From positions 3,468,443-3,532,442 of the forward strand of contig NW_003314265.1 in assembly GCF_000143415.4 (NCBI RefSeq): a DNA stretch of 64,000 bases. The letters run 5' to 3'. Each line of letters opens with the position of its first letter. The first letter of the stretch is position 1. Below, one piece after another: positions 5,208-14,262 of this stretch. The notes beneath the pieces are model-generated. The model did no database searches and had not been told where the DNA came from. It saw only the letters and a program-made list of their open reading frames with translations. The DNA comes from Selaginella moellendorffii (lineage: Eukaryota > Plantae > Lycopodiophyta). The translations under genes and the position numbers were made by a program.

Positions 5208-6927
5208 CTATTGGAACTCTGCTCGGACGGCTCTGAGATCCATCAATCTCTTCTTAAGCGATTCCAGGACGCGCACCACCAGTCTCTTCTTCGTCAGCCT
5301 GAACTGTACCGCGATCCTGCTCGTCTCCGCCAGGGATTTGTCCGAGAGCTTCGCCTCGTCCTCCTCGATGGTCGTCTTGAACTGGTTGAAAACGATTGCT
5401 GCCAGGCCACAGAGCGTTCGCAGCACTCGCTCCTCGTTGTCACTGCTCACCATGCTCTCCACCCCCCAAGCTTGTAACGAGACGAGCTCTCTGCGCTCGA
5501 GTGGCTCCTGGCTCTCGGCATGGAGGATTCTCAGCGCTGCCAGCAACCGGCCATCAACCTCCTCCGGACCTCCAAGCGTCACCTACACATCAAAACAATG
5601 AGTTCTAGCTACTTCTTTTTCTCGCAGAGAGTAGCTGTGAACCTTTTGTGATTCTCCACTATCAGCGAGACCAAGTTGTTTGAGCCGGTCCACTTGCCAA
5701 GAAGCCGGAGATGAAAATGGTGGCGAGCCCGTACGACTCAAGCCCGCTATCATCCTGGCGTTCTCCATCAAGCTCCCATCGTACCTCAGCTCGATGCGAT
5801 CGTGTGGATTGTCAGGGATGACAAAACCGTAGTCTAGCAAAAGCAGATCATTGCTGAGCGGGCCATAGTTTAGAGTGATCGCTGATCCCTTCTCCAAGTT
5901 ACGTTTAGTCACCACCTGAAAGAAAAACACGAGTTAAATGATTGATGTGTTTGGAAGGTAGAGAACAAGGAACGACGAACCTTCAAGAAGCTGACATCCT
6001 GAGCATCTCTCGACAAGTCCTCCTCGATGTGAGCATTCGGCTGGAAGCTATGATTGCACATATCAATCAGAGGAAGCATCATTGCCGAGCAAAGCTTGTT
6101 GGTGACACCGTGAATCCGGAAAGCCCGGCTCGAGACAGCAGCCATTGCCCAGCCGAGCGCTCCCGAATCAACAGACTGACCAGCAAAAGGATGAACTTCT
6201 TCCGGCAGTGATTCTAGCTTGGCCAACTCGGCGGAGAACTGCAAGAGAAATCGGCACCTCTTTTTCACCTGAAAGAGAAAGGCAAAAATGCGATTGAGAT
6301 TTAAATCCAGATAGCAAAGTTGACTCACTTGATGTGTAACAGGTGCGTAGTCGATGCTCTCAATGTCTACTCCAGAGAAAAAAATCGGAAGAGTGAAAGA
6401 GTGTGGAAGCATGCTGATATATGGCCACCAGTAAGATCCTTTCTGAGCTCTTTCATACAAAAGCTTGAGGCCCAGCCTCATTGCCCAAAGCTCCTCTATC
6501 AGTTCCTGGCAAGACGAGGTCAGTACCAGCGAAACAGGAAAGGAAAAAAAGAACTTTAAGGTCGACTAGGCCTACCTGGAACTCGATTAGCAATCTCGCA
6601 AATCACTCCCTCCGATGGCGCTAAAACCGCAGCATTCTCGGGATCAGGCATCGGCATTGGAACTCTTCGCGGCAGAGTGATTATCGTGGAACCCTGAGGC
6701 AAATCCTGAGTCGCCACAAGCCCCATACCGTGAGAAGATCCACTGTGAACGACATGGAGGCCGCTCCACACAAATCCCCCCTGATTCTTCACCCAGCCCC
6801 GGAGATCCACACTGGCAGCGAAGGCCGAGGCCGCGGAGCTCCAGCGCCTCGCGCCGTGGACCGGCATTCTCGCCCTAGCGCCTGGCGCCATCGCCTGGGA
6901 GCAGCAAAGAACCACCACACCTCTCAT
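5208..6927 (-). CDS. SET-domain lysine methyltransferase, Rubisco LSMT-like (multi-exon)
   Basis: Exons encode 'GMGLVATQDL', 'WWPYISMLP', 'MLPLIDMCNHS', 'LNYGPLSNDLLLLDYGFV..NP.D' and a C-terminal LSMT substrate-binding-like region 'TTIEEDEAKL...AVQFRLTKK'. Start at 6927 or 6891. Confidence 0.88.
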
Positions 6928-7080
6928 TTTCAAAACCCCCCTAAAAACCTAAAGTCTTGGATTTTGAGCTGGAAGAGGAAGCGCGCCCAAAGGTATGTAT
7001 GTTCTTCCGCGCCCTGGCGCCGATCCTCGCCTCGATCGATCGCATCCTATCCATCGCTTGCTCGCATTCTTTGCCATCAG

Positions 7081-8863
7081 ATGGAGGACGATAGCAAGCG
7101 GAAGTGGGACGATCTCTCCGGAGACGAAGGCGCTTCCGAGGAGGACGACGATCTGGACAGTGATGACGAGGAGATGGCTGGAAGGGCCGCGTATGAGAAG
7201 CTCCTTCCAGAGGCCAAGGATCAAGTAGGAGATGCCAAGCCCAGCCTCAAGGACATGGAGATCAAGATTTGCTGCGTGTGCCGCGCCAGGGTCACTGGTT
7301 GGGTGGGTCTTATGGCTCACGCCAGGACCTTCAAGAAGAAGTACGTGGCTCAGCATCGCGGCTATCACAAGGCCCTTGTGGAGGTGATCGATCCCAAGCC
7401 GCAAGATCGCGGGAAGAAAGTGGAGCTCGCCGAGGCCCGGGTGAGCTCCAGGGTCTTGCTCGAGGATCACAAGAAAGTGGTCTGGCCGCCGGTGGTGCTT
7501 GTGGATTGCTCGAGCGTGGAGCAGGCTCGGAGCTTGATCGAGGAGAGTGTGATCGATCAAAGTAAGTGCCAGTGTTTTCTTTTCTCTTTTCATTCCTAAC
7601 TGGTCTTCTTGCTTTAGTTGAGAGGGTCTGCGAAGGATTTCTTGTTGTCTGCAAGAAGATCCCTCTCGCTTTGACGCTGCTGCGCTGCTTGATGGAGCCG
7701 TGTAAGGTGCTCCAGCCGGAAGACATGGCGCGGATTGATCCGGAGAGAAAACTGGTAGACTGGTGCGCTATGAGTTTGGATGAAGCTGCTAGCTACATGA
7801 AGGATCTCAACATGGTGCGAGCTTCACTTTCTTCTTGTTTCTGCTTTTATAGCTCCTTTTGTTCTCTGTGTCAGGATGACGAAAAACTTGCTGACAACGT
7901 GAAGGCTCAAAAGCTTCAAAGCTGGAAGCTCGAGGTCGCCCAGGGGAAGACAACTTCGCTGAATTCGAATCTAGCGAGCTTGCTGAAGCTCCGTGAGGAC
8001 AAGCTGACGGAGCTACGACAGAGACACCAGCCCGGTGATAATTCTGAGGCTCTTAAGGTGACAAAGACTCTCTCTTTGGTTTTCTTACTTTGTTGTCTTG
8101 TAGCTCGAGATCCAGCGAAAAATGCAGCTCTTTGAGGAGCAGCTGAACCACAAGGAAAAGCAAACCGCACATCAAATGGTTTTGAGGAGAGCCAAGATGG
8201 TTAGGCAAAGAAACGAAGCTCTCAAGCAGAAACAACATCTGGAGCGATTGCTGCGGAAGCAAGCCAAACAAACGTGAGTTCTTTTTTTTTTCTCTCCCTC
8301 TCTTTTTCTCGATTCGCGATCAACATCCGCTGCAGCTCGGAGAAAATGGAGCAGCTGAAAGGCAAGCAACAAAGGGATGAGGAAGAGCAGCGCAAGTGTT
8401 TGGAGAAAATTGAATCGGACTTTCGGGGTGAGGAGTTAATGCTTATCACACAACACGAAAATGAGCTCAAGCAGGTGAATTGACTTCGTAGCTTGCCGAG
8501 ATTTGATTGCTTTTCTTTGTCAGCTCCAAGAGGCGGTGGAGAAAGAGACGAAAATGGCACTGGACGAGCTGCTGGATAAACAAAAGCGGGCCAAGCAAGA
8601 GCAACAGAACTCTCCAAAAGTGAGTCGCTTGCCAACACTTAAAATTTCTCATTTCCCGTGTGGTTCCTTCGCAGGAATGCATTGTTTGCACGAGGCAGTT
8701 TTCATCGGAGCTAAGGAGGGCAGTTCTCGTCCCATGCGGCCACTACACGATGTGCATCGAATGCTGCTCGGGAATCTGGAACCTCCGCAAGCCAAAGTGC
8801 CCCGCAAAGTGTCCCGTCTGTCGTATGGTGATCGAGCTCAAGCCCGAGGTCACCTACGAGTGA
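7081..8863 (+). CDS. zf-XS-like + degenerate XS + coiled coil + C-terminal RING-HC protein (SGS3-related), 7 exons
   Basis: In-frame GT-AG exons starting at about 7081, 7618, 7875, 8104, 8336, 8524 and 8675. Motifs: 'CCVC..GLMAHARTFK..HRGYHKAL', 'VVWPPVVLV', E/K/Q-rich coil, 'CIVC...PCGHYTMCIEC...CPVCR'. Confidence 0.8.
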
Positions 8864-8948
8864 GCAACGTACAACATCAAGGTCGGGTATTAGCCTCTTT
8901 TCCAGAGCGTCTTCTTCACTATTGAGCTCAGCCTCTCTTTCATTTAAG

Positions 8949-9050
8949 CAGGAAAAGTCTAGCGAGACAACTATCGAAACTTACAGAAGTTAAACAAGAA
9001 CAGGAAAATTCTAGCGAGACAACTTTCGGAACTTAGAGAAGTTTAGCAGA
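8949..9050. repeat. 52-bp imperfect tandem duplication between the two XS-RING stop codons
   Basis: 'caggaaaagtctagcgagacaactatcgaaacttacagaagtt' at 8949 recurs as 'caggaaaattctagcgagacaactttcggaacttagagaagtt' at 9001. Confidence 0.85.
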
Positions 9051-9267
9051 GATATATGATATAGTCCGGTCGGTCCCCCGACAAATTTTGTACACTCCAA
9101 CACTACTATTCTCTAGCTTATAAAACCATGGAAGATCCCCCAAATGCTTTGCACCAAAAAGTTAAAGCCACTATGCATAGTTCCAAGTTCTTGTTGATCC
9201 TGAAAAAAGCCTTGATTCAGAAAAGCTCCAACTTACCGGAGTATAATGTACGTATGGTAGATAAATA

Positions 9268-10917
9268 TCAGTCGAAGAGCTTGATAGGCTTCTTGTTCTG
9301 GACGGTCCGGCAGTGGGGACACTCGTGGTTCTTCTTCCACAGCTCGTCCGCACACGGCTGGCATGACTTGGCATGCTTGCAGGTGATGTAAAACACCTTC
9401 GGCCTTTCGGGGCCAAACTCTTCGAAACAAACCTGGCACTCCTGGAAAAAAAAGTTTGGATAAAGAAGCATTAGAACAAAGTTATGCTTTGATCACAAGA
9501 TGAAGAGACTTACAAGCCCAAGGACGGTCTCCATCTCCTTGTCCAGAGCTTCCTGGCCGACGTTGTAGCTGTTCCACGCTGCCTCCTTCTTTGCAGCGCG
9601 CTCCTCCAGGAGCTTTGCAACGCACAAAGAAAAACCTGCTTTAGGAAAAAAGGAGAAATACAAACTTGCTTACCTTCTTCCTCTCCTCCAAATGCCGCTC
9701 TTTCATCTCCCGCAACTTGAACTCATGCCTTGTCTTGATTTCGTCAAGGCCCTTCTGCGCTTCGGTAGCAATAGCCACTTGAGTTCTAGCGCGCATGTCT
9801 CTGCAAGGATACGAAACATTCACAGTGAGCGAGATAGACCAGAGAATGCTTCTTACGCCATAGCCAAAGCTTGCTGCACTCTAATATTACTCTCCAGAGA
9901 CGAGTTCTCTCGACGAATGCGAGCCATCTCATCTTCTTCGTCTTTGAGGTTCTTGTTGATTTCGGCGCGCATATTCATCTCTTTCTCGGTGAATTGCCTC
10001 AATCGCTCGGCCTTCTCCGCTTCAAACTGGTCTATCATCCGCTTTTTCTGTCACAGAGATACATACGACCGCATCAGAATACGAGAAGAAACGAAAGAAA
10101 TGAAATGGACAAAGCACTGCCTACTTGTTCTTCGTGCCTTTTCCTATTCTCCTCCTGCCGGCGCTCCTCGGCAGCATACTCCTCGTCCACGGCCATAATC
10201 TCTGCCTTGCGCTTGTCCATGGCAGCCTCATCGGCCGCCAATTTTCTCTTTTGCTCGTTCACCGATGCTAGCAGCTCGGCTTCAATCTTCTGGTTCTCCT
10301 CGCTAGCCTGTAAAGAAATCCTTTCATCAAGCTCATACTTGAAGAGAAGAAAAGAAGCGGCCTTCCTCACCTTCATCTTCTCTCGCTGCGACTTCATCAC
10401 TTTCTCTTGGAAACTCTCCTCCTTCCAGTTCCTCACCAGTCTTTTCTTCCTGTCTAGCTTCTTCATCTCGTGCGGCTCCACCAAGTATCCATAGAGCTCC
10501 TTCTTCTTCTCGCCATAGCGGACCTCCTGCCGCTCGTCACGCCCCCACTCGTCACGCCCCCTCTTGCGATCCTTGAACGCATCATGGAGAGCCACCGCGT
10601 CAATGTACCCAGCGTCGCAATCCGGGAAGACGACGAGGTAGCGGCCCTTGTGCCCTTCCTCCTTGTACACGGGAACAACCCTGCGGATCGCGATCTTGGG
10701 CGCCACTGCGCTCACAGCACTTCTTACCTCCGCGGCATTGAGGCCGATGCTCTTCCCAGTCTCCGGATCATGCCCCAGCCCCGTATTTTCCAGCAGCACG
10801 CACGGCGGCCACACGATGAGCTTGTCCGCGCCGTAGCTGTTCGAGAGGAAGCAGCGAGATCGATCGATCGATCGATCTCAAACAAGACAAGAATCCAGAA
10901 TCATACCTTGCCTGCAT
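9268..10917 (-). CDS. XS domain + coiled coil + C-terminal RING-HC protein (SGS3-related)
   Basis: ATG at 10917 (MQAS|YGADKLIVWPPCVLLENT). Full XS-like block 'IVWPP...GHKG..LVVF....GY.DA..LH..F...RGRDEW...ELYGYL...ESFQEKV', then coil exons and last exon 'CQVC...CKHAKSCQPC...CPHCR', stop at 9268. Confidence 0.85.
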
Positions 10918-11286
10918 TCTTCCAGAACGATCGCGCGCGTATTGCAAGAATGCCCCGATGCTGCTCGATCGTCTTAGATTCTAGGAACTCTCCCTCGCTC
11001 CCTCTAAAATCCCCTAAGGAATCGTTTAAACCCTAAACAAAATTATTGCTACTGGATATTCTCGATTCAAACGATAGTAAGCACTTAATATATATGAAGC
11101 TAACCTCAAAACGTTTTCGTTACATTTTACGTGCTTTCAAGGGTCCTCCAAAAGAGAGAAAAATAAGATCGTCTTCCCACTCCTAAGTAGTTCTCTATTA
11201 CCACGCTGAAGCAGTCCAATTTCCATCCTAAACAGCCAAGAAAAAAAAAATGAGAGAATTTTCGGCAATAAACTTGAGAGGAGCTT

Positions 11287-14262
11287 TCACAGTACTTGTT
11301 GCTGATAAGCTTGAGGGTACCCAGCGTAGCTTTGTGCCGTTTGCGGCTGCTGGGGATAGCTGCTATAGTTATAGTCCGTAGCCTGCGAAGAGTTTCTATG
11401 ATTTGTAAGAAGCGTGACAATGAAACCAAAACGTTCTTACCGGGTATGCTTGGCTCCATTGTTGTTGAGGTTGCTGCCAGTTTTGGTAGCTCCACTGCGC
11501 TTGTCCATTGGTATAACCAGCGACGGCGTTGGAACCGGTCTTGACGAGCTTGCTCCGATCAGAGACGGCGCTGTCCAGTGACGAGCGCTTCTTGGAATCG
11601 CTGGACCTCGAGTACAAGAATGCCTGTCGATGCCGCAGCTCAGCCCTCTTACAGTCTTCTACAGTCCCATAAGAATCCAGAAACTGCCGCAAAAACCATA
11701 CTACAAATGTGAGTGCTTACGATAAAGGAGTAAGAAGTCACAACCTCAAGAAATAAACTCGATATCTCCTCACGATCAGATGATTGCAAAGCAGCGTCCG
11801 AGCCGCTGCTGAGTATAGCACGTTCAATGATAGCCTCGAGTTTTGGTATGTCCTTCTCGGGAGAGAGTGTCTCAAAATGGATCGCAGCCTGTAAAGAGAT
11901 TTCAGCGAGTATACCAAATGAGAAGAAAAAGAAAAGGAGAAAGAAACTTACCTCCAAGATAACTTTGGAGTTCGGTAGTTTCTCCAATGCAAGGGCCAAG
12001 ATCTCCTTCGATTTATCTGAGAGTCCGGCCTAGAACACACACTGTCAGAAAGGAAAGCATCAGAAGTTCTCACCTCAGAAAGGAACCGGATATATTGAAT
12101 ATACAAGAAAGACAAAACTCTCGATTCCTCCTTCGCTTTTTCCACTTCCAAAGCAGATTCATAGATGGCACAAGCGCCGTCAATATTCCCCTAGATTACA
12201 AAAATACGCTTAGCATCGTATGAAAAATGGGACAAATCCATGTACCTGTCTTTTCTCAAAATTTGCGTGCTTAGAAATAACCTCAAGAAGCCCGGGAGCT
12301 ATTTCAGAGCTGAGAACGCTATACTCTTTTCGAGCGCCTGCAGCATCTCCCCTGCGTTCTTTAAATCTAGCAGCGTAGATATGTATCTCGGGTCGTCTCT
12401 GCAATACAGAAGATGTCAGAAAAGAACGTAGAACTCTTCGATAAACCTTGACAAAAATGTGTAGTGCGCGATCCAAAGCATCATCAGCTATCTCAGATCG
12501 AGATTTTGCTTCCATTGTATGAATATAGCGAATCCAATACTCCGGATAATTTGCACAGGCGATCACACATCTCTCGTATGCCTTCACTATCTGCAATTAA
12601 AATACATTAGTTTCAGCGTCAAGTAGGGAAAAGACTGCATTACCTTGTCAAAGTCACCTTCTTTTTCCAGAAAATCCAAATAGCGATGCCAGTTGAGTAG
12701 TTGCAAGTCATCTAGAGGCTTGACATGAAAATACGGCCTTCTTATAGCGGTTTCATACTCTCGAATTTTTGCATCCCACTCCTTCGTCGATTTATATAGC
12801 TCCTCTCTTCTTCTAATAAACCTTTCAACTTCTGGATCCTTTGGGGCTTCTGCAGTTTCATCAGCTCCTGCTTTATCTATTTGCTCGGGAACAGTATTAT
12901 CGGCTTCTGCGCTATCTTCAGGACCTTTCAGTTCCGCTATGGGTCGATTGTTGGCTAACTCCTTGAAGCTGAAAGAAAACATTAGCATGCAAACTGTTTT
13001 AAGGATTTTCTTACTGTGAGAAGTAGCGATCCAAAGCTTGAAGGGCTATCTGTAAAATCCGTGTATACAACTGAGTGATGCCTACCCAGTTCGAATGAGA
13101 ATACTCAAAATCAATGTACTTGTCCCAAAGCTGATGCGCCAGGTAGTCGGTGCCGACGTGCGAGAGTCCACGCTCAAACAACCTGAAAAAAAATTAAAAA
13201 ATGAAAAAGATAGTTGTTATCCCATCGAAGTTGATAAAGGAAGAAAAAAAAACGTAAACGTAGCATGAGCCTGACCCCATCAAAGAAGGCATATCTTCCA
13301 GCAGAAGGCAGGGACCTTGCTCTTAAACAGCTAAAGTTACCTTCCTACAACACCAGTGGTGTTCACCGCGATTGCCGACGGCACCAGTTTGAAGGTATGT
13401 TGCCAAGAAGCAAAGAGAAAAGCAACCAGCCCACTAAGAACATGAGAAAAACGAAAAGACTGAATGCGAGGACGAACTAAAAAAGGAAAACCATGCTCAA
13501 ACCGTTTCGCCAACCTTCCCTCTGGAGAAAAACATTTAAAGTAGGATGAAAGCTGCAGAAATACCAGCCAACGGTTAGAAAGAAACAAAGAAGCTAGACA
13601 GCTCAGGGATTGACAAAGCGAAACACTGCCCAGTCAGGATAAAGAAAAATGCCACCGGCGTGCTAAAGTTTACCTCCTCAGCGCTTCTGGATCTTCGGGC
13701 TTGGCCGCCGAAACAAAGGAGCAGTAGTGCACCCATATGTCGACTGAGTGCGTCACGGCTTTCACAGCCCTCTCGTAAACCTCGATGGTCTTCTCGGGCG
13801 TTGCCAGCCGGTTCTCATGGTCCGCGTATTTTTTCCAGTAGCCATAGCACAGAGGAAACTCGGCCAGGAACGTATCATAGCACTGGCGAAACTTGACTAT
13901 ATCATCCTGGAAGAGAAAAGAAGAAACGAAAGCTTTAGAATTGAGAGACTCAAGAACTCCAAAAAAAGAAAAAAAAAAAAAAACGCACGAGCTTCTCAGT
14001 CTCTTGAATCAGCTGCGTCCATGAATTAAAGTCCGCTGGATTGGCATTCACGATGCCCCACAGCCTCTCTTCCTCGTTGCTTGGAGCTGGAAAAACCAAT
14101 CCTCTCAGGCTAAAAGCTCTAAAAAAACCTGGAACACATACCTAGGACTTCCTCGCCGTTTTGATCCACAGCCACGCTCCGGTGATCATACTCCACGGCC
14201 TTGTCAGCGGCCGCGGCGCCATAATCCTGCATTCGAGTCCCAGCGTACTCCTGACCATCCAT
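11287..14262 (-). CDS. PRP39: Pre-mRNA processing factor 39 (U1 snRNP HAT-repeat protein)
   Basis: Exons encode '[19 protein letters not shown]', '[27 protein letters not shown]', '[18 protein letters not shown]' and a Q/Y-rich C-terminal tail. Ends are approximate. Confidence 0.92.

What the first reader, a model, noticed from the sequence alone, without database searches (positions are those of the whole stretch)
7081..10917. Tail-to-tail pair of SGS3-like XS-domain proteins fused to RING fingers: a candidate RNA-binding E3 ligase module
Seen: two intact, convergent, diverged paralogues. The minus-strand gene has a full SGS3-type XS domain (IVWPP...GHKG...GY.DA..LH...GRDEW...LYGYL...SFQEKV), a long coiled coil and a RING-HC. 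The plus-strand gene has an acidic N-terminus, a zf-XS-like finger, an eroded XS (VVWPP...PEDMARIDPERKLVDW, matching PHEMKKLDRKKRLVRNW in its partner), a coil and a RING-HC. Both RINGs sit on a separate last exon starting 'EC..C'. Established: XS domains in SGS3 and IDN2/FDM bind dsRNA in silencing pathways and are normally followed by a coil or XH domain; I do not recall an XS-RING fusion. Inference: these may couple dsRNA or siRNA-precursor recognition to ubiquitination, possibly as a heterodimer with the finger on one partner and an intact XS on the other.
Basis: partly seen in the sequence, partly recalled or inferred. Interest (0 to 1): 0.85.

Follow-up and report, generated by a model that had tools for sequence, protein, structure and literature searches.

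The report
Paired XS-domain RING ligase genes, Selaginella
Two neighbouring, expressed genes of the lycophyte Selaginella moellendorffii belong to an old, unstudied plant family that joins the RNA-binding XS domain of gene-silencing proteins to a ubiquitin-ligase RING finger. One copy keeps an intact XS domain and the other only its remnants.

Summary
The window is Selaginella moellendorffii. The minus gene (10917-9268, 7 exons, 416 aa) has an XS domain with a confident IDN2-like fold, about 210 residues of helical coil and a C-terminal RING. The plus gene (7081-8863, 7 exons, 484 aa) has an acidic N-terminus, a finger homologous to zf-XS, only the two ends of an XS domain, a coil and a RING.

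RNA contigs show all twelve introns; stranded raw reads show nine, including both junctions onto the RING exons. Both genes are intact on the second haplotype and look constrained.

The fusion is not unique. XS-coil-RING proteins occur in Klebsormidium, Chara, Diphasiastrum and Ceratopteris, and probably in a gymnosperm. There is a finger-less "short" form and a finger-bearing "long" form, and the two Selaginella genes are old paralogues, one of each. All are annotated as hypothetical. One 2018 paper mentions a Selaginella XS-plus-RING protein in a single sentence.

The RING is closest to the dimeric RNF4, IAP and MEX3 types and keeps a penultimate aromatic residue. The most likely reading is coiled-coil-dimerised, RNA-binding E3 ligases. 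A heterodimer of the two is possible but untested. This is a new variant of a known kind, of moderate interest.

The parts
7081..8863 (+). Plus gene, 484 aa (P0138, SELMODRAFT_406008), the long-form XS-RING family member. Exons: 7081-7561, 7618-7814, 7875-8057, 8104-8273, 8336-8474, 8524-8619, 8675-8863.
   Evidence: The manual model equals the deposited protein. All six introns appear as joints in RNA contigs, and four of them in stranded raw reads whose first mate lies on the minus strand.
7081..7227 (+). Acidic N-terminus (aa 1-31) followed by a conserved helix (AYEKLLPEAKDQV) that is shared by the long-form members.
   Evidence: Alignments. The AF2 model puts a helix at model residues 2-22, with pLDDT 74-90.
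7261..7392 (+). zf-XS-like finger (aa 61-104), a C-x2-C ... H ... H motif: C.VC..GW..L..HA..FKKK...QHRGY..AL.
   Evidence: hhalign of the long-form finger alignment against the zf-XS regions of SGS3-type proteins gives probability 97.5% and E 5.9e-12 over 45 columns. There is no Pfam zf-XS hit. The Cys and His ligands are invariant in A2.
7465..7787 (+). XS remnant (aa 129-217), interrupted by intron 1 (7562-7617). The VVWPP strand and the PEDMARIDPERKLVDW end are kept. About 55 residues of the core are missing (the GH.G hairpin, GY.DA, RGR..W and LYGYL motifs).
   Evidence: The family XS HMM matches only aa 129-147 and 193-217, E 5e-4. hhalign against the broad XS profile matches only the C-terminal piece, probability 71.5%. 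Alignment. The AF2 model has low confidence here and finds no PDB match. The allele P0139 carries the same deletion.
7778..8619 (+). Helical, charged coil region (aa 214-421; 51% D/E/K/R/Q, 2 Pro).
   Evidence: Composition. It aligns collinearly with the coil of other family members.
8675..8863 (+). Last exon: RING-HC (C424...C471) plus a C-terminal tail ending in ...TYE, then the stop codon.
   Evidence: Pfam zf-C3HC4_3 scores 33.4 bits on this exon. All eight zinc ligands are invariant. The joint 8619|8675 is seen in RNA. The best PDB sequence match is the MEX3C RING.
8880..8951 (+). Intron of about 70 nt in the 3' UTR of the plus gene.
   Evidence: Joint 8879>8950, GT..AG with the cut shifted by 2, in RNA contig X1.
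9268..10917 (-). Minus gene, 416 aa (P0001), the short-form XS-RING family member. Exons: 10917-10907, 10836-10371, 10307-10125, 10047-9857, 9800-9674, 9612-9514, 9441-9268.
   Evidence: The manual model equals the deposited protein. All six introns appear as joints in RNA contigs, and five of them in stranded raw reads whose first mate lies on the plus strand. The tool places the joint at 9856/9800 one base off my model; either placement still encodes Ala.
10413..10826 (-). Intact XS domain (Pfam aa 8-128; the structural domain runs to about aa 145).
   Evidence: Pfam XS scores 61.9 bits. The AF2 model has pLDDT 89.8 and pTM 0.84. Its top Foldseek hit is 4E8U, the IDN2 XS domain: E 5e-8, TM 0.70, 154 columns. 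P0001 carries 9 of the 11 nearly invariant XS residues of the 60-sequence alignment; the list comes and the residue count is my own reading of the P0001 sequence.
9517..10412 (-). Helical, charged coil region (aa 146-358; 52% D/E/K/R/Q, no Pro), spread over exons 2-6.
   Evidence: Composition. The helix starts in the AF2 model at aa 146-159. Structural neighbours in the Atlas include XH/XS proteins aligned over aa 1-408.
9268..9441 (-). Last exon: RING-HC (C361...C403) plus a tail ending in ...KLFD, then the stop codon.
   Evidence: Pfam zf-C3HC4_3 scores 36 bits on this exon. The joint 9441|9514 is seen in RNA. The ligands are invariant.

Best explanation
These are two functional, expressed genes of an ancient and so far uncharacterised streptophyte branch of the SGS3-like (XS-domain) protein family. 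In this branch the XS domain and coiled coil are followed by a C-terminal RING-HC finger, not by an XH domain or nothing.

The minus gene is a 'short form': an intact RRM-like XS domain, about 210 residues of coil, and a RING. The plus gene is a 'long form': an acidic N-terminus, a zf-XS-homologous finger, an XS domain that has lost its core, a coil, and a RING.

Shown here: the gene structures, their splicing and expression, the domain identities, the family membership and the age of the duplication.

Inferred:
1. The coil dimerises the protein, as in IDN2, and brings two C-terminal RINGs together as an RNF4/IAP-type RING dimer.
2. That dimer recruits a ubiquitin-charged E2.
3. The intact XS domain of the short form binds RNA, by analogy dsRNA with 5' overhangs. 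The ligase would then act on proteins associated with that RNA, or be regulated by it.
4. The long form has probably lost XS-type RNA binding. It would contribute the finger and a RING, either on its own or as a partner of the short form.
For: Gene models and expression:
- The gene models are identical to the database proteins.
- All 12 introns, including both junctions onto the RING exons, are seen in RNA contigs of two studies. Nine of them, again including both RING-exon junctions, are seen in stranded raw reads on the correct strand.
- Both genes are intact on the second haplotype. pN/pS is 0.10 for the minus gene and 0.32 for the plus gene.

Domains:
- Minus gene: XS by Pfam, 61.9 bits. 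XS by fold: AF2 pLDDT 89.8, Foldseek hit 4E8U at E 5e-8 and TM 0.70.
- Plus gene: the finger is homologous to zf-XS, hhalign probability 97.5%.

Family:
- Full-length collinear relatives with Pfam XS and RING occur in Diphasiastrum, Chara and Klebsormidium, and in several transcript contigs.
- Ceratopteris has a long form.
- P0005 is about 80% identical in its XS domain to a Ginkgo protein (my estimate from the alignment; 58% overall).
- The XS tree separates the land-plant XS-RING group from SGS3-type proteins, support 98/92.
- In the coil+RING tree, P0001 sits in the short-form clade (98/98), and a P0001+P0138 sister pairing is marginally rejected, p-AU 0.046.
- Five of six introns are shared.

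RING:
- All eight ligands, the Pro after Cys7 and a penultimate aromatic residue are conserved.
- The family RING profile matches RNF4 best (E 2e-15, alignment running into the tail), then MEX3C, TRIM32, IAPs and MDM2.
Against: - No biochemical data exist for any member.
- Coiled-coil formation, RING dimerisation, E3 activity and RNA binding are all inferred from homology.
- The RNA-binding surface of XS domains is not defined well enough to check residue by residue.
- The plus gene has no Pfam XS or zf-XS hit. Its N-terminal model is only moderately confident and matches no solved fold.
- Read depth in the two raw RNA-seq runs is low, 17-20 reads.
- The XS-domain tree places P0001 nearer the long forms (89/90), in conflict with the coil+RING tree.
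Confidence: 0.62

Rival explanations
1. Obligate heterodimer. The two neighbours pair through their coils and RINGs. The short form supplies the intact XS domain and the long form supplies the zf-XS finger, so together they rebuild an SGS3-like 'finger + XS' unit attached to a RING dimer.
For: - The features are complementary: XS is intact only in P0001, and the finger is present only in P0138.
- The RINGs are of a dimeric type with the tail aromatic residue kept in both.
- There are precedents for paralogue complexes in which only one partner binds dsRNA (IDN2-IDP1/2, PMC3342958) and for a heterodimer (FDDM1-FDDM2, PMC8872474).
- Both genes are expressed in the same RNA samples.
- Short and long forms coexist in Selaginella and Diphasiastrum, and Chara made such a pair independently.
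Against: - No interaction data exist, and no multimer model could be run.
- Long forms in other species keep their own recognisable XS domain (P0004 and P0025, about 43 bits), so they need no partner for it.
- The genes are not adjacent in Diphasiastrum.
- Homodimers explain the same features.
Confidence: 0.2
2. The plus gene is simply a coiled-coil RING ligase unrelated to XS proteins, as its RefSeq name 'BRE1B' and its RING-only Pfam annotation suggest. On this view the VVWPP and PEDM motifs are chance resemblances.
For: Pfam finds only the RING. Foldseek and VIA-align find no XS-like or RRM-like fold in the N-terminal model.
Against: - The N-terminal 235 residues align collinearly with long-form members that do carry a Pfam-significant XS domain (P0004, P0025, P0060, P0061), at 23-36% identity and with invariant finger ligands.
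- The finger is homologous to zf-XS.
- Two collinear XS-HMM matches fall at the expected places.
- Five of six introns are shared with the XS-bearing neighbour.
- There is no Pfam BRE1 hit.
Confidence: 0.05
3. The proteins are real, but the XS domain serves here as a protein-interaction or oligomerisation module. On this view the ligase has nothing to do with RNA or silencing.
For: - XS erosion in two long forms (Selaginella P0138 and Ceratopteris P0150) shows the family can dispense with an intact XS domain.
- IDP1 and IDP2 carry XS domains yet do not bind dsRNA.
Against: - The short-form XS domain is well conserved: pN/pS is 0.10, 9 of 11 nearly invariant XS residues are kept, and the fold is a confident RRM-like match to IDN2.
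- Every XS domain tested biochemically that keeps these features binds dsRNA with 5' overhangs: FDDM1 and IDN2.
Confidence: 0.13

Closest known systems
SGS3 (SUPPRESSOR OF GENE SILENCING 3)
   Same: Both have an XS domain followed by a coiled coil. The long form also has a homologous zf-XS finger upstream of the XS domain.
   Different: SGS3 has no RING. The XS domains of the land-plant XS-RING group form a separate, supported group from SGS3-type proteins, 98/92. The short form lacks the finger. According to PMC5907777, Selaginella moellendorffii lacks SGS3 and the tasiRNA machinery.
IDN2/FDM/FDDM (XS-coiled coil-XH proteins of RNA-directed DNA methylation)
   Same: The XS fold of P0001 superposes on the IDN2 XS crystal structure 4E8U, including the start of the coil. 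IDN2 homodimerises through its coil, and these proteins form paralogue complexes.
   Different: There is no XH domain; a RING occupies the C-terminus. Identity to IDN2 XS is only 18%. No IDN2-type protein appeared among the sequence hits.
RNF4, IAP and MDM2 type dimeric C-terminal RING E3 ligases
   Same: The RING-HC sits at the extreme C-terminus with a short tail that ends in a conserved aromatic residue one position from the end. The family profile matches RNF4 best, with the alignment running into the tail.
   Different: The N-terminal parts are unrelated (SUMO-interaction motifs, BIR or p53-binding domains). Dimerisation of the plant RINGs is not shown.
MEX3 and other RNA-binding RING E3 ligases (MEX3C, CNOT4, TRIM25, Roquin)
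   Same: The logic is the same: an RNA-binding module joined to a RING in one polypeptide. The MEX3C RING is the best solved-structure sequence match of P0138 and the second-best match of the family profile.
   Different: The RNA-binding module here is XS (RRM-like and plant-specific), not KH, RRM, ROQ or SPRY. It is an independent fusion.

Membership tests
XS domain (Pfam PF03468), minus gene | Profile match above the gathering score | tested here: met
   61.9 bits against a cut-off of 25, aa 8-128.
XS domain (Pfam PF03468), minus gene | RRM-like XS fold as in the IDN2 crystal structure 4E8U | tested here: met
   AF2 pLDDT 89.8. Foldseek hit 4E8U at E 5.4e-8, TM 0.70, 154 columns, followed by RRMs.
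XS domain (Pfam PF03468), plus gene | Profile match above the gathering score | tested here: not met
   No XS hit even at E<=1 on the full-length protein or its pieces. Only the two ends match a family HMM, E 5e-4, or the XS profile, probability 71.5%.
XS domain (Pfam PF03468), plus gene | XS/RRM-like fold | tested here: inconclusive
   The model of aa 28-235 has pLDDT 68, and 43-78 in the remnant. There is no Foldseek hit and no informative VIA-align hit. About 55 core residues are absent.
zf-XS finger (Pfam PF03470), plus gene | Pfam profile match | tested here: not met
   No hit at E<=1.
zf-XS finger (Pfam PF03470), plus gene | Homology to SGS3 zf-XS by profile-profile comparison, with the C-x2-C...H...H ligands present | tested here: met
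   hhalign probability 97.5%, E 5.9e-12, 45 columns. The ligands C37, C40, H53 and H65 are invariant in A2.
SGS3 orthologue | zf-XS + XS + coil with no further C-terminal domain, and an XS domain that groups with SGS3 | tested here: not met
   A C-terminal RING is present. The XS domain lies in a separate supported group.
IDN2/FDM (XH/XS proteins) | C-terminal XH domain (PF03469) | tested here: not met
   Neither protein has an XH hit.
RING-HC E3 ligase | C3HC4 zinc ligands with correct spacing, and a Pfam RING match | tested here: met
   zf-C3HC4_3 scores 36 and 33.4 bits on the two exons. All eight ligands are invariant across the 11 family members of A1 and the 12 of A4.
RING-HC E3 ligase | E2-dependent ubiquitin transfer | not testable with these tools
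   This needs an in vitro ubiquitination assay. By direct reading of the sequence, the hydrophobic residue before Cys2, the helix Trp, the Pro after Cys7 and the Arg after Cys8 are present in both proteins.
Dimeric RNF4/IAP/MDM2-type RING | RING at the extreme C-terminus with a conserved aromatic residue near the last position | tested here: met
   The tails end in ...LFD and ...TYE. Ten of the 11 other members in A4 have F or Y one residue from the end; P0013 does not. The best profile match in the PDB is RNF4, with the alignment extending into the tail. That this residue acts in dimer-dependent activation is from my knowledge of RNF4 and BIRC7.
Dimeric RNF4/IAP/MDM2-type RING | Actual RING dimerisation | not testable with these tools
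   No multimer prediction or experiment was available.
Unnamed XS-coiled coil-RING family of streptophytes | Collinear full-length similarity to members from other species, with XS first and RING last, and a shared gene structure | tested here: met
   P0002 aligns over aa 7-413 at E 2e-41, and eight further representative clusters carry XS plus RING. P0138 aligns with the long forms over its whole length. In Diphasiastrum the RING also lies in the last tblastn segment of the gene, beginning at KNKEC.
BRE1 and vicilin-like seed storage protein (RefSeq names of the two proteins) | BRE1 or cupin/vicilin domain match | tested here: not met
   No such Pfam hit at E<=10 or E<=1. The names probably reflect the charged coil composition.

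The most novel reading that the evidence does not exclude
In Selaginella, which lacks SGS3, the two neighbours have degenerated in complementary ways: one has lost the finger, the other the XS core. They would now work only together, as a heterodimeric RNA-sensing ubiquitin ligase that marks proteins on aberrant or double-stranded RNA. This would be a ubiquitin-based branch of RNA silencing or RNA quality control that angiosperm models have lost.
Probability: 0.1. Interest if true: 0.8.

Novelty: new variant of a known kind. Interest (0 to 1): 0.5.

Why it matters
XS-domain proteins (SGS3, IDN2/FDM, FDDM) are central to plant siRNA amplification and RNA-directed DNA methylation. All characterised members act as RNA-binding scaffolds without enzymatic activity.

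A conserved lineage that couples the same RNA-binding fold to a RING ligase would link recognition of silencing-type RNA to ubiquitination. It runs from charophyte algae to ferns, and probably to gymnosperms. It was not seen among named angiosperm hits here.

Because the family seems absent from Arabidopsis and rice it has escaped study. Ceratopteris would be the tractable system. The Selaginella pair also offers a natural contrast between an intact and an eroded XS domain in otherwise parallel proteins.

Tried and rejected
Searches that added little or nothing:
- The word-indexed protein searches found almost only the window's own proteins. The alignment query added only Ceratopteris P0150.
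- The ESM Atlas has no large cluster with XS plus RING.
- phmmer of P0001 against PDB sequences did not find IDN2 4E8U. Only the fold search did.
- The N-terminal model of P0138 gave no meaningful structural match with Foldseek or VIA-align.
- Literature searches for 'XS domain' with E3 ligase terms found nothing relevant.
- A search for the SRA run numbers of the unnamed transcript contigs found no paper. The organisms of P0003, P0013 and P0025 therefore remain unknown.

Readings rejected:
- A gene-model artefact, because the RNA joints confirm the models.
- A recent local tandem duplication.
- BRE1 or vicilin identity.
- Conserved adjacency of the two genes, which is absent in Diphasiastrum.

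Left open:
- The XS-domain tree and the coil+RING tree disagree on whether P0001 is nearer the long or the short forms. I favour the coil+RING result, which has more columns, 98/98 support and the short-form 'FG' RING signature.
Full report
**Identity of the window and the gene models**

The region contains short GT-AG introns of 46-77 nt. I built both genes by hand.

- The plus gene runs from 7081 to 8863, has 7 exons and encodes 484 aa.
- The minus gene runs from 10917 to 9268, has 7 exons and encodes 416 aa.
- Both translations are identical to deposited Selaginella moellendorffii proteins.
  - P0001 is named by RefSeq 'vicilin-like seed storage protein At2g18540'.
  - P0138 is SELMODRAFT_406008, named by RefSeq 'E3 ubiquitin-protein ligase BRE1B'.
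- The scaffold is GL377569.1.
- Flanking genes:
  - A SET-domain gene lies about 190 bp upstream of the plus gene and diverges from it.
  - A PRP39-like gene lies about 280 bp upstream of the minus gene.

**Expression and splicing**

I laid two stranded raw RNA-seq runs and two sets of RNA-derived contigs on 7000-11000.

- Every one of the twelve coding introns appears as a joint at my boundaries in the contigs. Nine also appear in raw reads.
- This includes the two junctions that attach the RING exons, 8619|8675 and 9441|9514. Each is seen in both raw-read runs and both contig sets.
- Reads over the plus gene have the first mate on the minus strand, and reads over the minus gene the reverse. 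This is what a stranded library gives for two convergent genes.
- One joint (9856/9800) is placed one base off by the tool. Either placement gives Ala, so the protein is unchanged.
- Depth is low, 17-20 reads from about 12% of each run.

**Constraint**

- The second haplotype (GL377663.1) has the same gene order: SET, plus gene, XS-RING gene, PRP39-like gene.
- Both coding sequences are gap-free there.
  - The minus gene has 4 non-synonymous and 10 synonymous differences, pN/pS 0.10.
  - The plus gene has 11 non-synonymous and 9 synonymous differences, pN/pS 0.32.
- The counts are small, but both genes look constrained, the minus gene more so.
- The allele P0139 carries the same truncated XS domain as P0138, so the truncation is not an assembly error.

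**Minus gene domains**

- Pfam XS scores 61.9 bits against a cut-off of 25 over aa 8-128. Pfam zf-C3HC4_3 covers aa 360-405.
- An AF2 model of aa 1-160, built from a 60-sequence XS alignment, is confident: pLDDT 89.8, pTM 0.84.
- Its top Foldseek hit is 4E8U, the Arabidopsis IDN2 XS domain with the start of its coiled coil: E 5e-8, TM 0.70, 154 columns. RRM domains follow.
- Residues 146-358 contain no proline and are 52% charged or Gln.

**Plus gene domains**

- Pfam finds only the RING, at 25.9 bits on the full-length protein and 33.4 bits on the exon alone.
- No XS or zf-XS hit appears, even at E<=1.
- The protein still aligns along its whole length with 'long-form' relatives that do have a Pfam-significant XS domain.
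- It shares three N-terminal features with them:
  - an acidic stretch;
  - a conserved helix;
  - a finger, C.VC..GW.AL..HA..FKKK...QHRGY..AL.
- hhalign of this finger alignment against the zf-XS regions of eight SGS3-type proteins gives probability 97.5% and E 6e-12.
- Of the XS domain, only the first strand (VVWPP, aa 129-147) and the last segment (PEDMARIDPERKLVDW, aa 193-217) are detectable.
- About 55 core residues are missing, including the GH.G hairpin and the GY.DA, RGR..W and LYGYL motifs.
- An AF2 model of aa 28-235 is confident for the N-terminal helix and the finger but poor in the remnant. It matches no solved fold.
By itself this protein fails an XS membership test.

**The two genes are paralogues**

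- BLASTP links their coil and RING regions at E 9e-8.
- Three introns fall in identical alignment columns with the same phase. Two more fall within 5-18 columns with the same phase.
- One of the exactly shared introns is the phase-0 intron immediately before 'EC..C'.

**The architecture is a family**

An exhaustive phmmer search of P0001 against 1.84 billion representatives gave 94 hits. Besides P0001 itself, nine clusters carry XS plus a C-terminal RING. Their sources are listed.

| Organism | Members |
|---|---|
| Diphasiastrum complanatum | P0002 (short form); P0004 and P0098 (long form) |
| Chara braunii | P0049 (no finger); P0060 (with finger) |
| Klebsormidium nitens | P0061 |
| Unknown (transcript-like contigs) | P0003, P0005, P0013, P0025 |

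- In the four transcript-like contigs, XS and RING lie in one uninterrupted ORF.
- A profile search added Ceratopteris richardii P0150. It is a long form whose XS domain is also partly eroded and undetected by Pfam.
- P0005 is about 80% identical across its XS domain to a truncated Ginkgo model (my estimate from the alignment; 58% overall), so it probably comes from a gymnosperm.
- No named angiosperm protein with this architecture appeared. That is absence of evidence only.

**Phylogeny**

- In an XS-domain tree of 72 sequences, the land-plant XS-RING proteins form one supported side of a branch, 98/92.
  - That side also includes a Marchantia XS-only protein and some fragments.
  - SGS3-type proteins lie on the other side. 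The Chara and Klebsormidium members branch between the two.
- In a coil+RING tree of 281 columns, P0001 falls in the finger-less short-form clade with P0002, P0003 and P0005, support 98/98.
  - A P0001+P0138 sister pairing is marginally rejected, p-AU 0.046.
  - Placing P0138 with the long forms is not rejected, p 0.31.
- The Selaginella pair therefore represents two subfamilies that separated before lycophytes and euphyllophytes diverged. It is not a recent local duplication.
- The XS tree puts P0001 nearer the long forms (89/90), and I leave that conflict open.
- The Chara pair arose by a separate duplication, 100/99.
- The two subfamily genes are on different chromosomes in Diphasiastrum, with no partner within 10 kb.

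**RING type**

- All eight zinc ligands and the Pro after Cys7 are invariant.
- Both Selaginella proteins keep four residues typical of active RINGs:
  - the hydrophobic residue before Cys2;
  - the helix Trp;
  - an Arg after Cys8;
  - an aromatic residue one position from the C-terminus (...LFD and ...TYE).
- A profile of the family RING plus tail matches RNF4 best (E 2e-15), with the alignment running into the RNF4 tail. MEX3C, TRIM32, IAPs and MDM2 follow.
- In RNF4, IAPs and MDM2, that tail aromatic residue belongs to the RING dimer interface and is needed to activate E2~ubiquitin. This point is from my own knowledge and was not tested here.
- Together with the long coil, and with IDN2 homodimerising through its coil (PMC3342958), this suggests a coiled-coil dimer ending in a RING dimer.

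**Mechanism**

The most likely reading is an RNA-binding, dimeric E3 ligase.

- The short-form XS domain would bind RNA, by analogy dsRNA with 5' overhangs. This is reported for FDDM1 (PMC8872474), and IDN2 binds dsRNA (PMC3342958).
- The RING dimer would ubiquitinate proteins on or near that RNA.
- The long form probably no longer binds RNA through its XS domain.
- Whether the two proteins pair is open.
  - For pairing: their features are complementary, they are expressed in the same samples, and there are precedents (IDN2-IDP1/2 and FDDM1-FDDM2).
  - Against pairing: long forms elsewhere keep their own XS domain, and homodimers explain the same data.

**Prior knowledge**

- All members are annotated as hypothetical, 'XS domain-containing' or 'RING-type domain-containing'.
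- PMC5907777 remarks that a Selaginella XS protein lacks zf-XS and has a C-terminal RING, citing XP_002979112. It uses this only to argue that Selaginella lacks SGS3.
- I found no functional study.
- The earlier notes of this scan near this place concern other loci and did not bear on this finding.

Noticed in passing
window 8864-9267: The 3' ends of the two convergent genes abut or overlap. One RNA-derived contig (X1, 2889 nt) runs without a break from the plus gene's 3' UTR through 8950-9440 into the minus gene's RING exon. Stranded reads of the plus transcript reach at least the 9010-9143 bin. The pair could be a natural antisense pair.
   Followed up: partly
window 8880-8951: The plus gene has an intron of about 70 nt in its 3' UTR. 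It is seen in contig X1 only.
   Followed up: no
window 7562-7617: Intron 1 of the plus gene lies inside the XS remnant. In its Diphasiastrum long-form relative P0004, the N-terminus, finger and XS domain form one uninterrupted exon (aa 1-321, L009:14268-15230). The XS erosion in Selaginella therefore coincides with a lineage-specific intron.
   Followed up: partly
P0001 and P0138 (window 9268-10917 and 7081-8863): The RefSeq product names ('vicilin-like seed storage protein At2g18540' and 'E3 ubiquitin-protein ligase BRE1B') have no Pfam domain support. They probably come from the charged coil composition.
   Followed up: yes
P0150 (Ceratopteris richardii KP509_11G037400): The fern long form has also lost part of its XS domain (the RGR..W to LYGYL segment) and has no Pfam XS hit. 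XS erosion therefore seems to recur in the long-form subfamily.
   Followed up: partly
P0049 and P0060 (Chara braunii): Chara has one finger-less and one finger-bearing XS-RING protein, and they are each other's closest relatives (100/99). The short/long split there arose independently of the one in land plants.
   Followed up: partly
window 5208-6891 (minus strand) and 11198-14081 (minus strand): Neighbouring genes: a SET-domain Rubisco-LSMT-like gene lies head-to-head with the plus gene, about 190 bp apart, so they may share a promoter region. A PRP39-like HAT-repeat gene ends about 280 bp upstream of the minus gene's start codon.
   Followed up: no
P0008 (Marchantia polymorpha MARPO_0004s0010) and P0016 (Ginkgo Gb_10240): Short XS-only proteins fall inside the XS-RING clade. 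The Ginkgo model looks like a truncated annotation of an XS-RING gene, since it is about 80% identical in its XS domain (my estimate from the alignment) to the 669-aa P0005. The Marchantia protein may be a genuine RING-less relative.
   Followed up: partly
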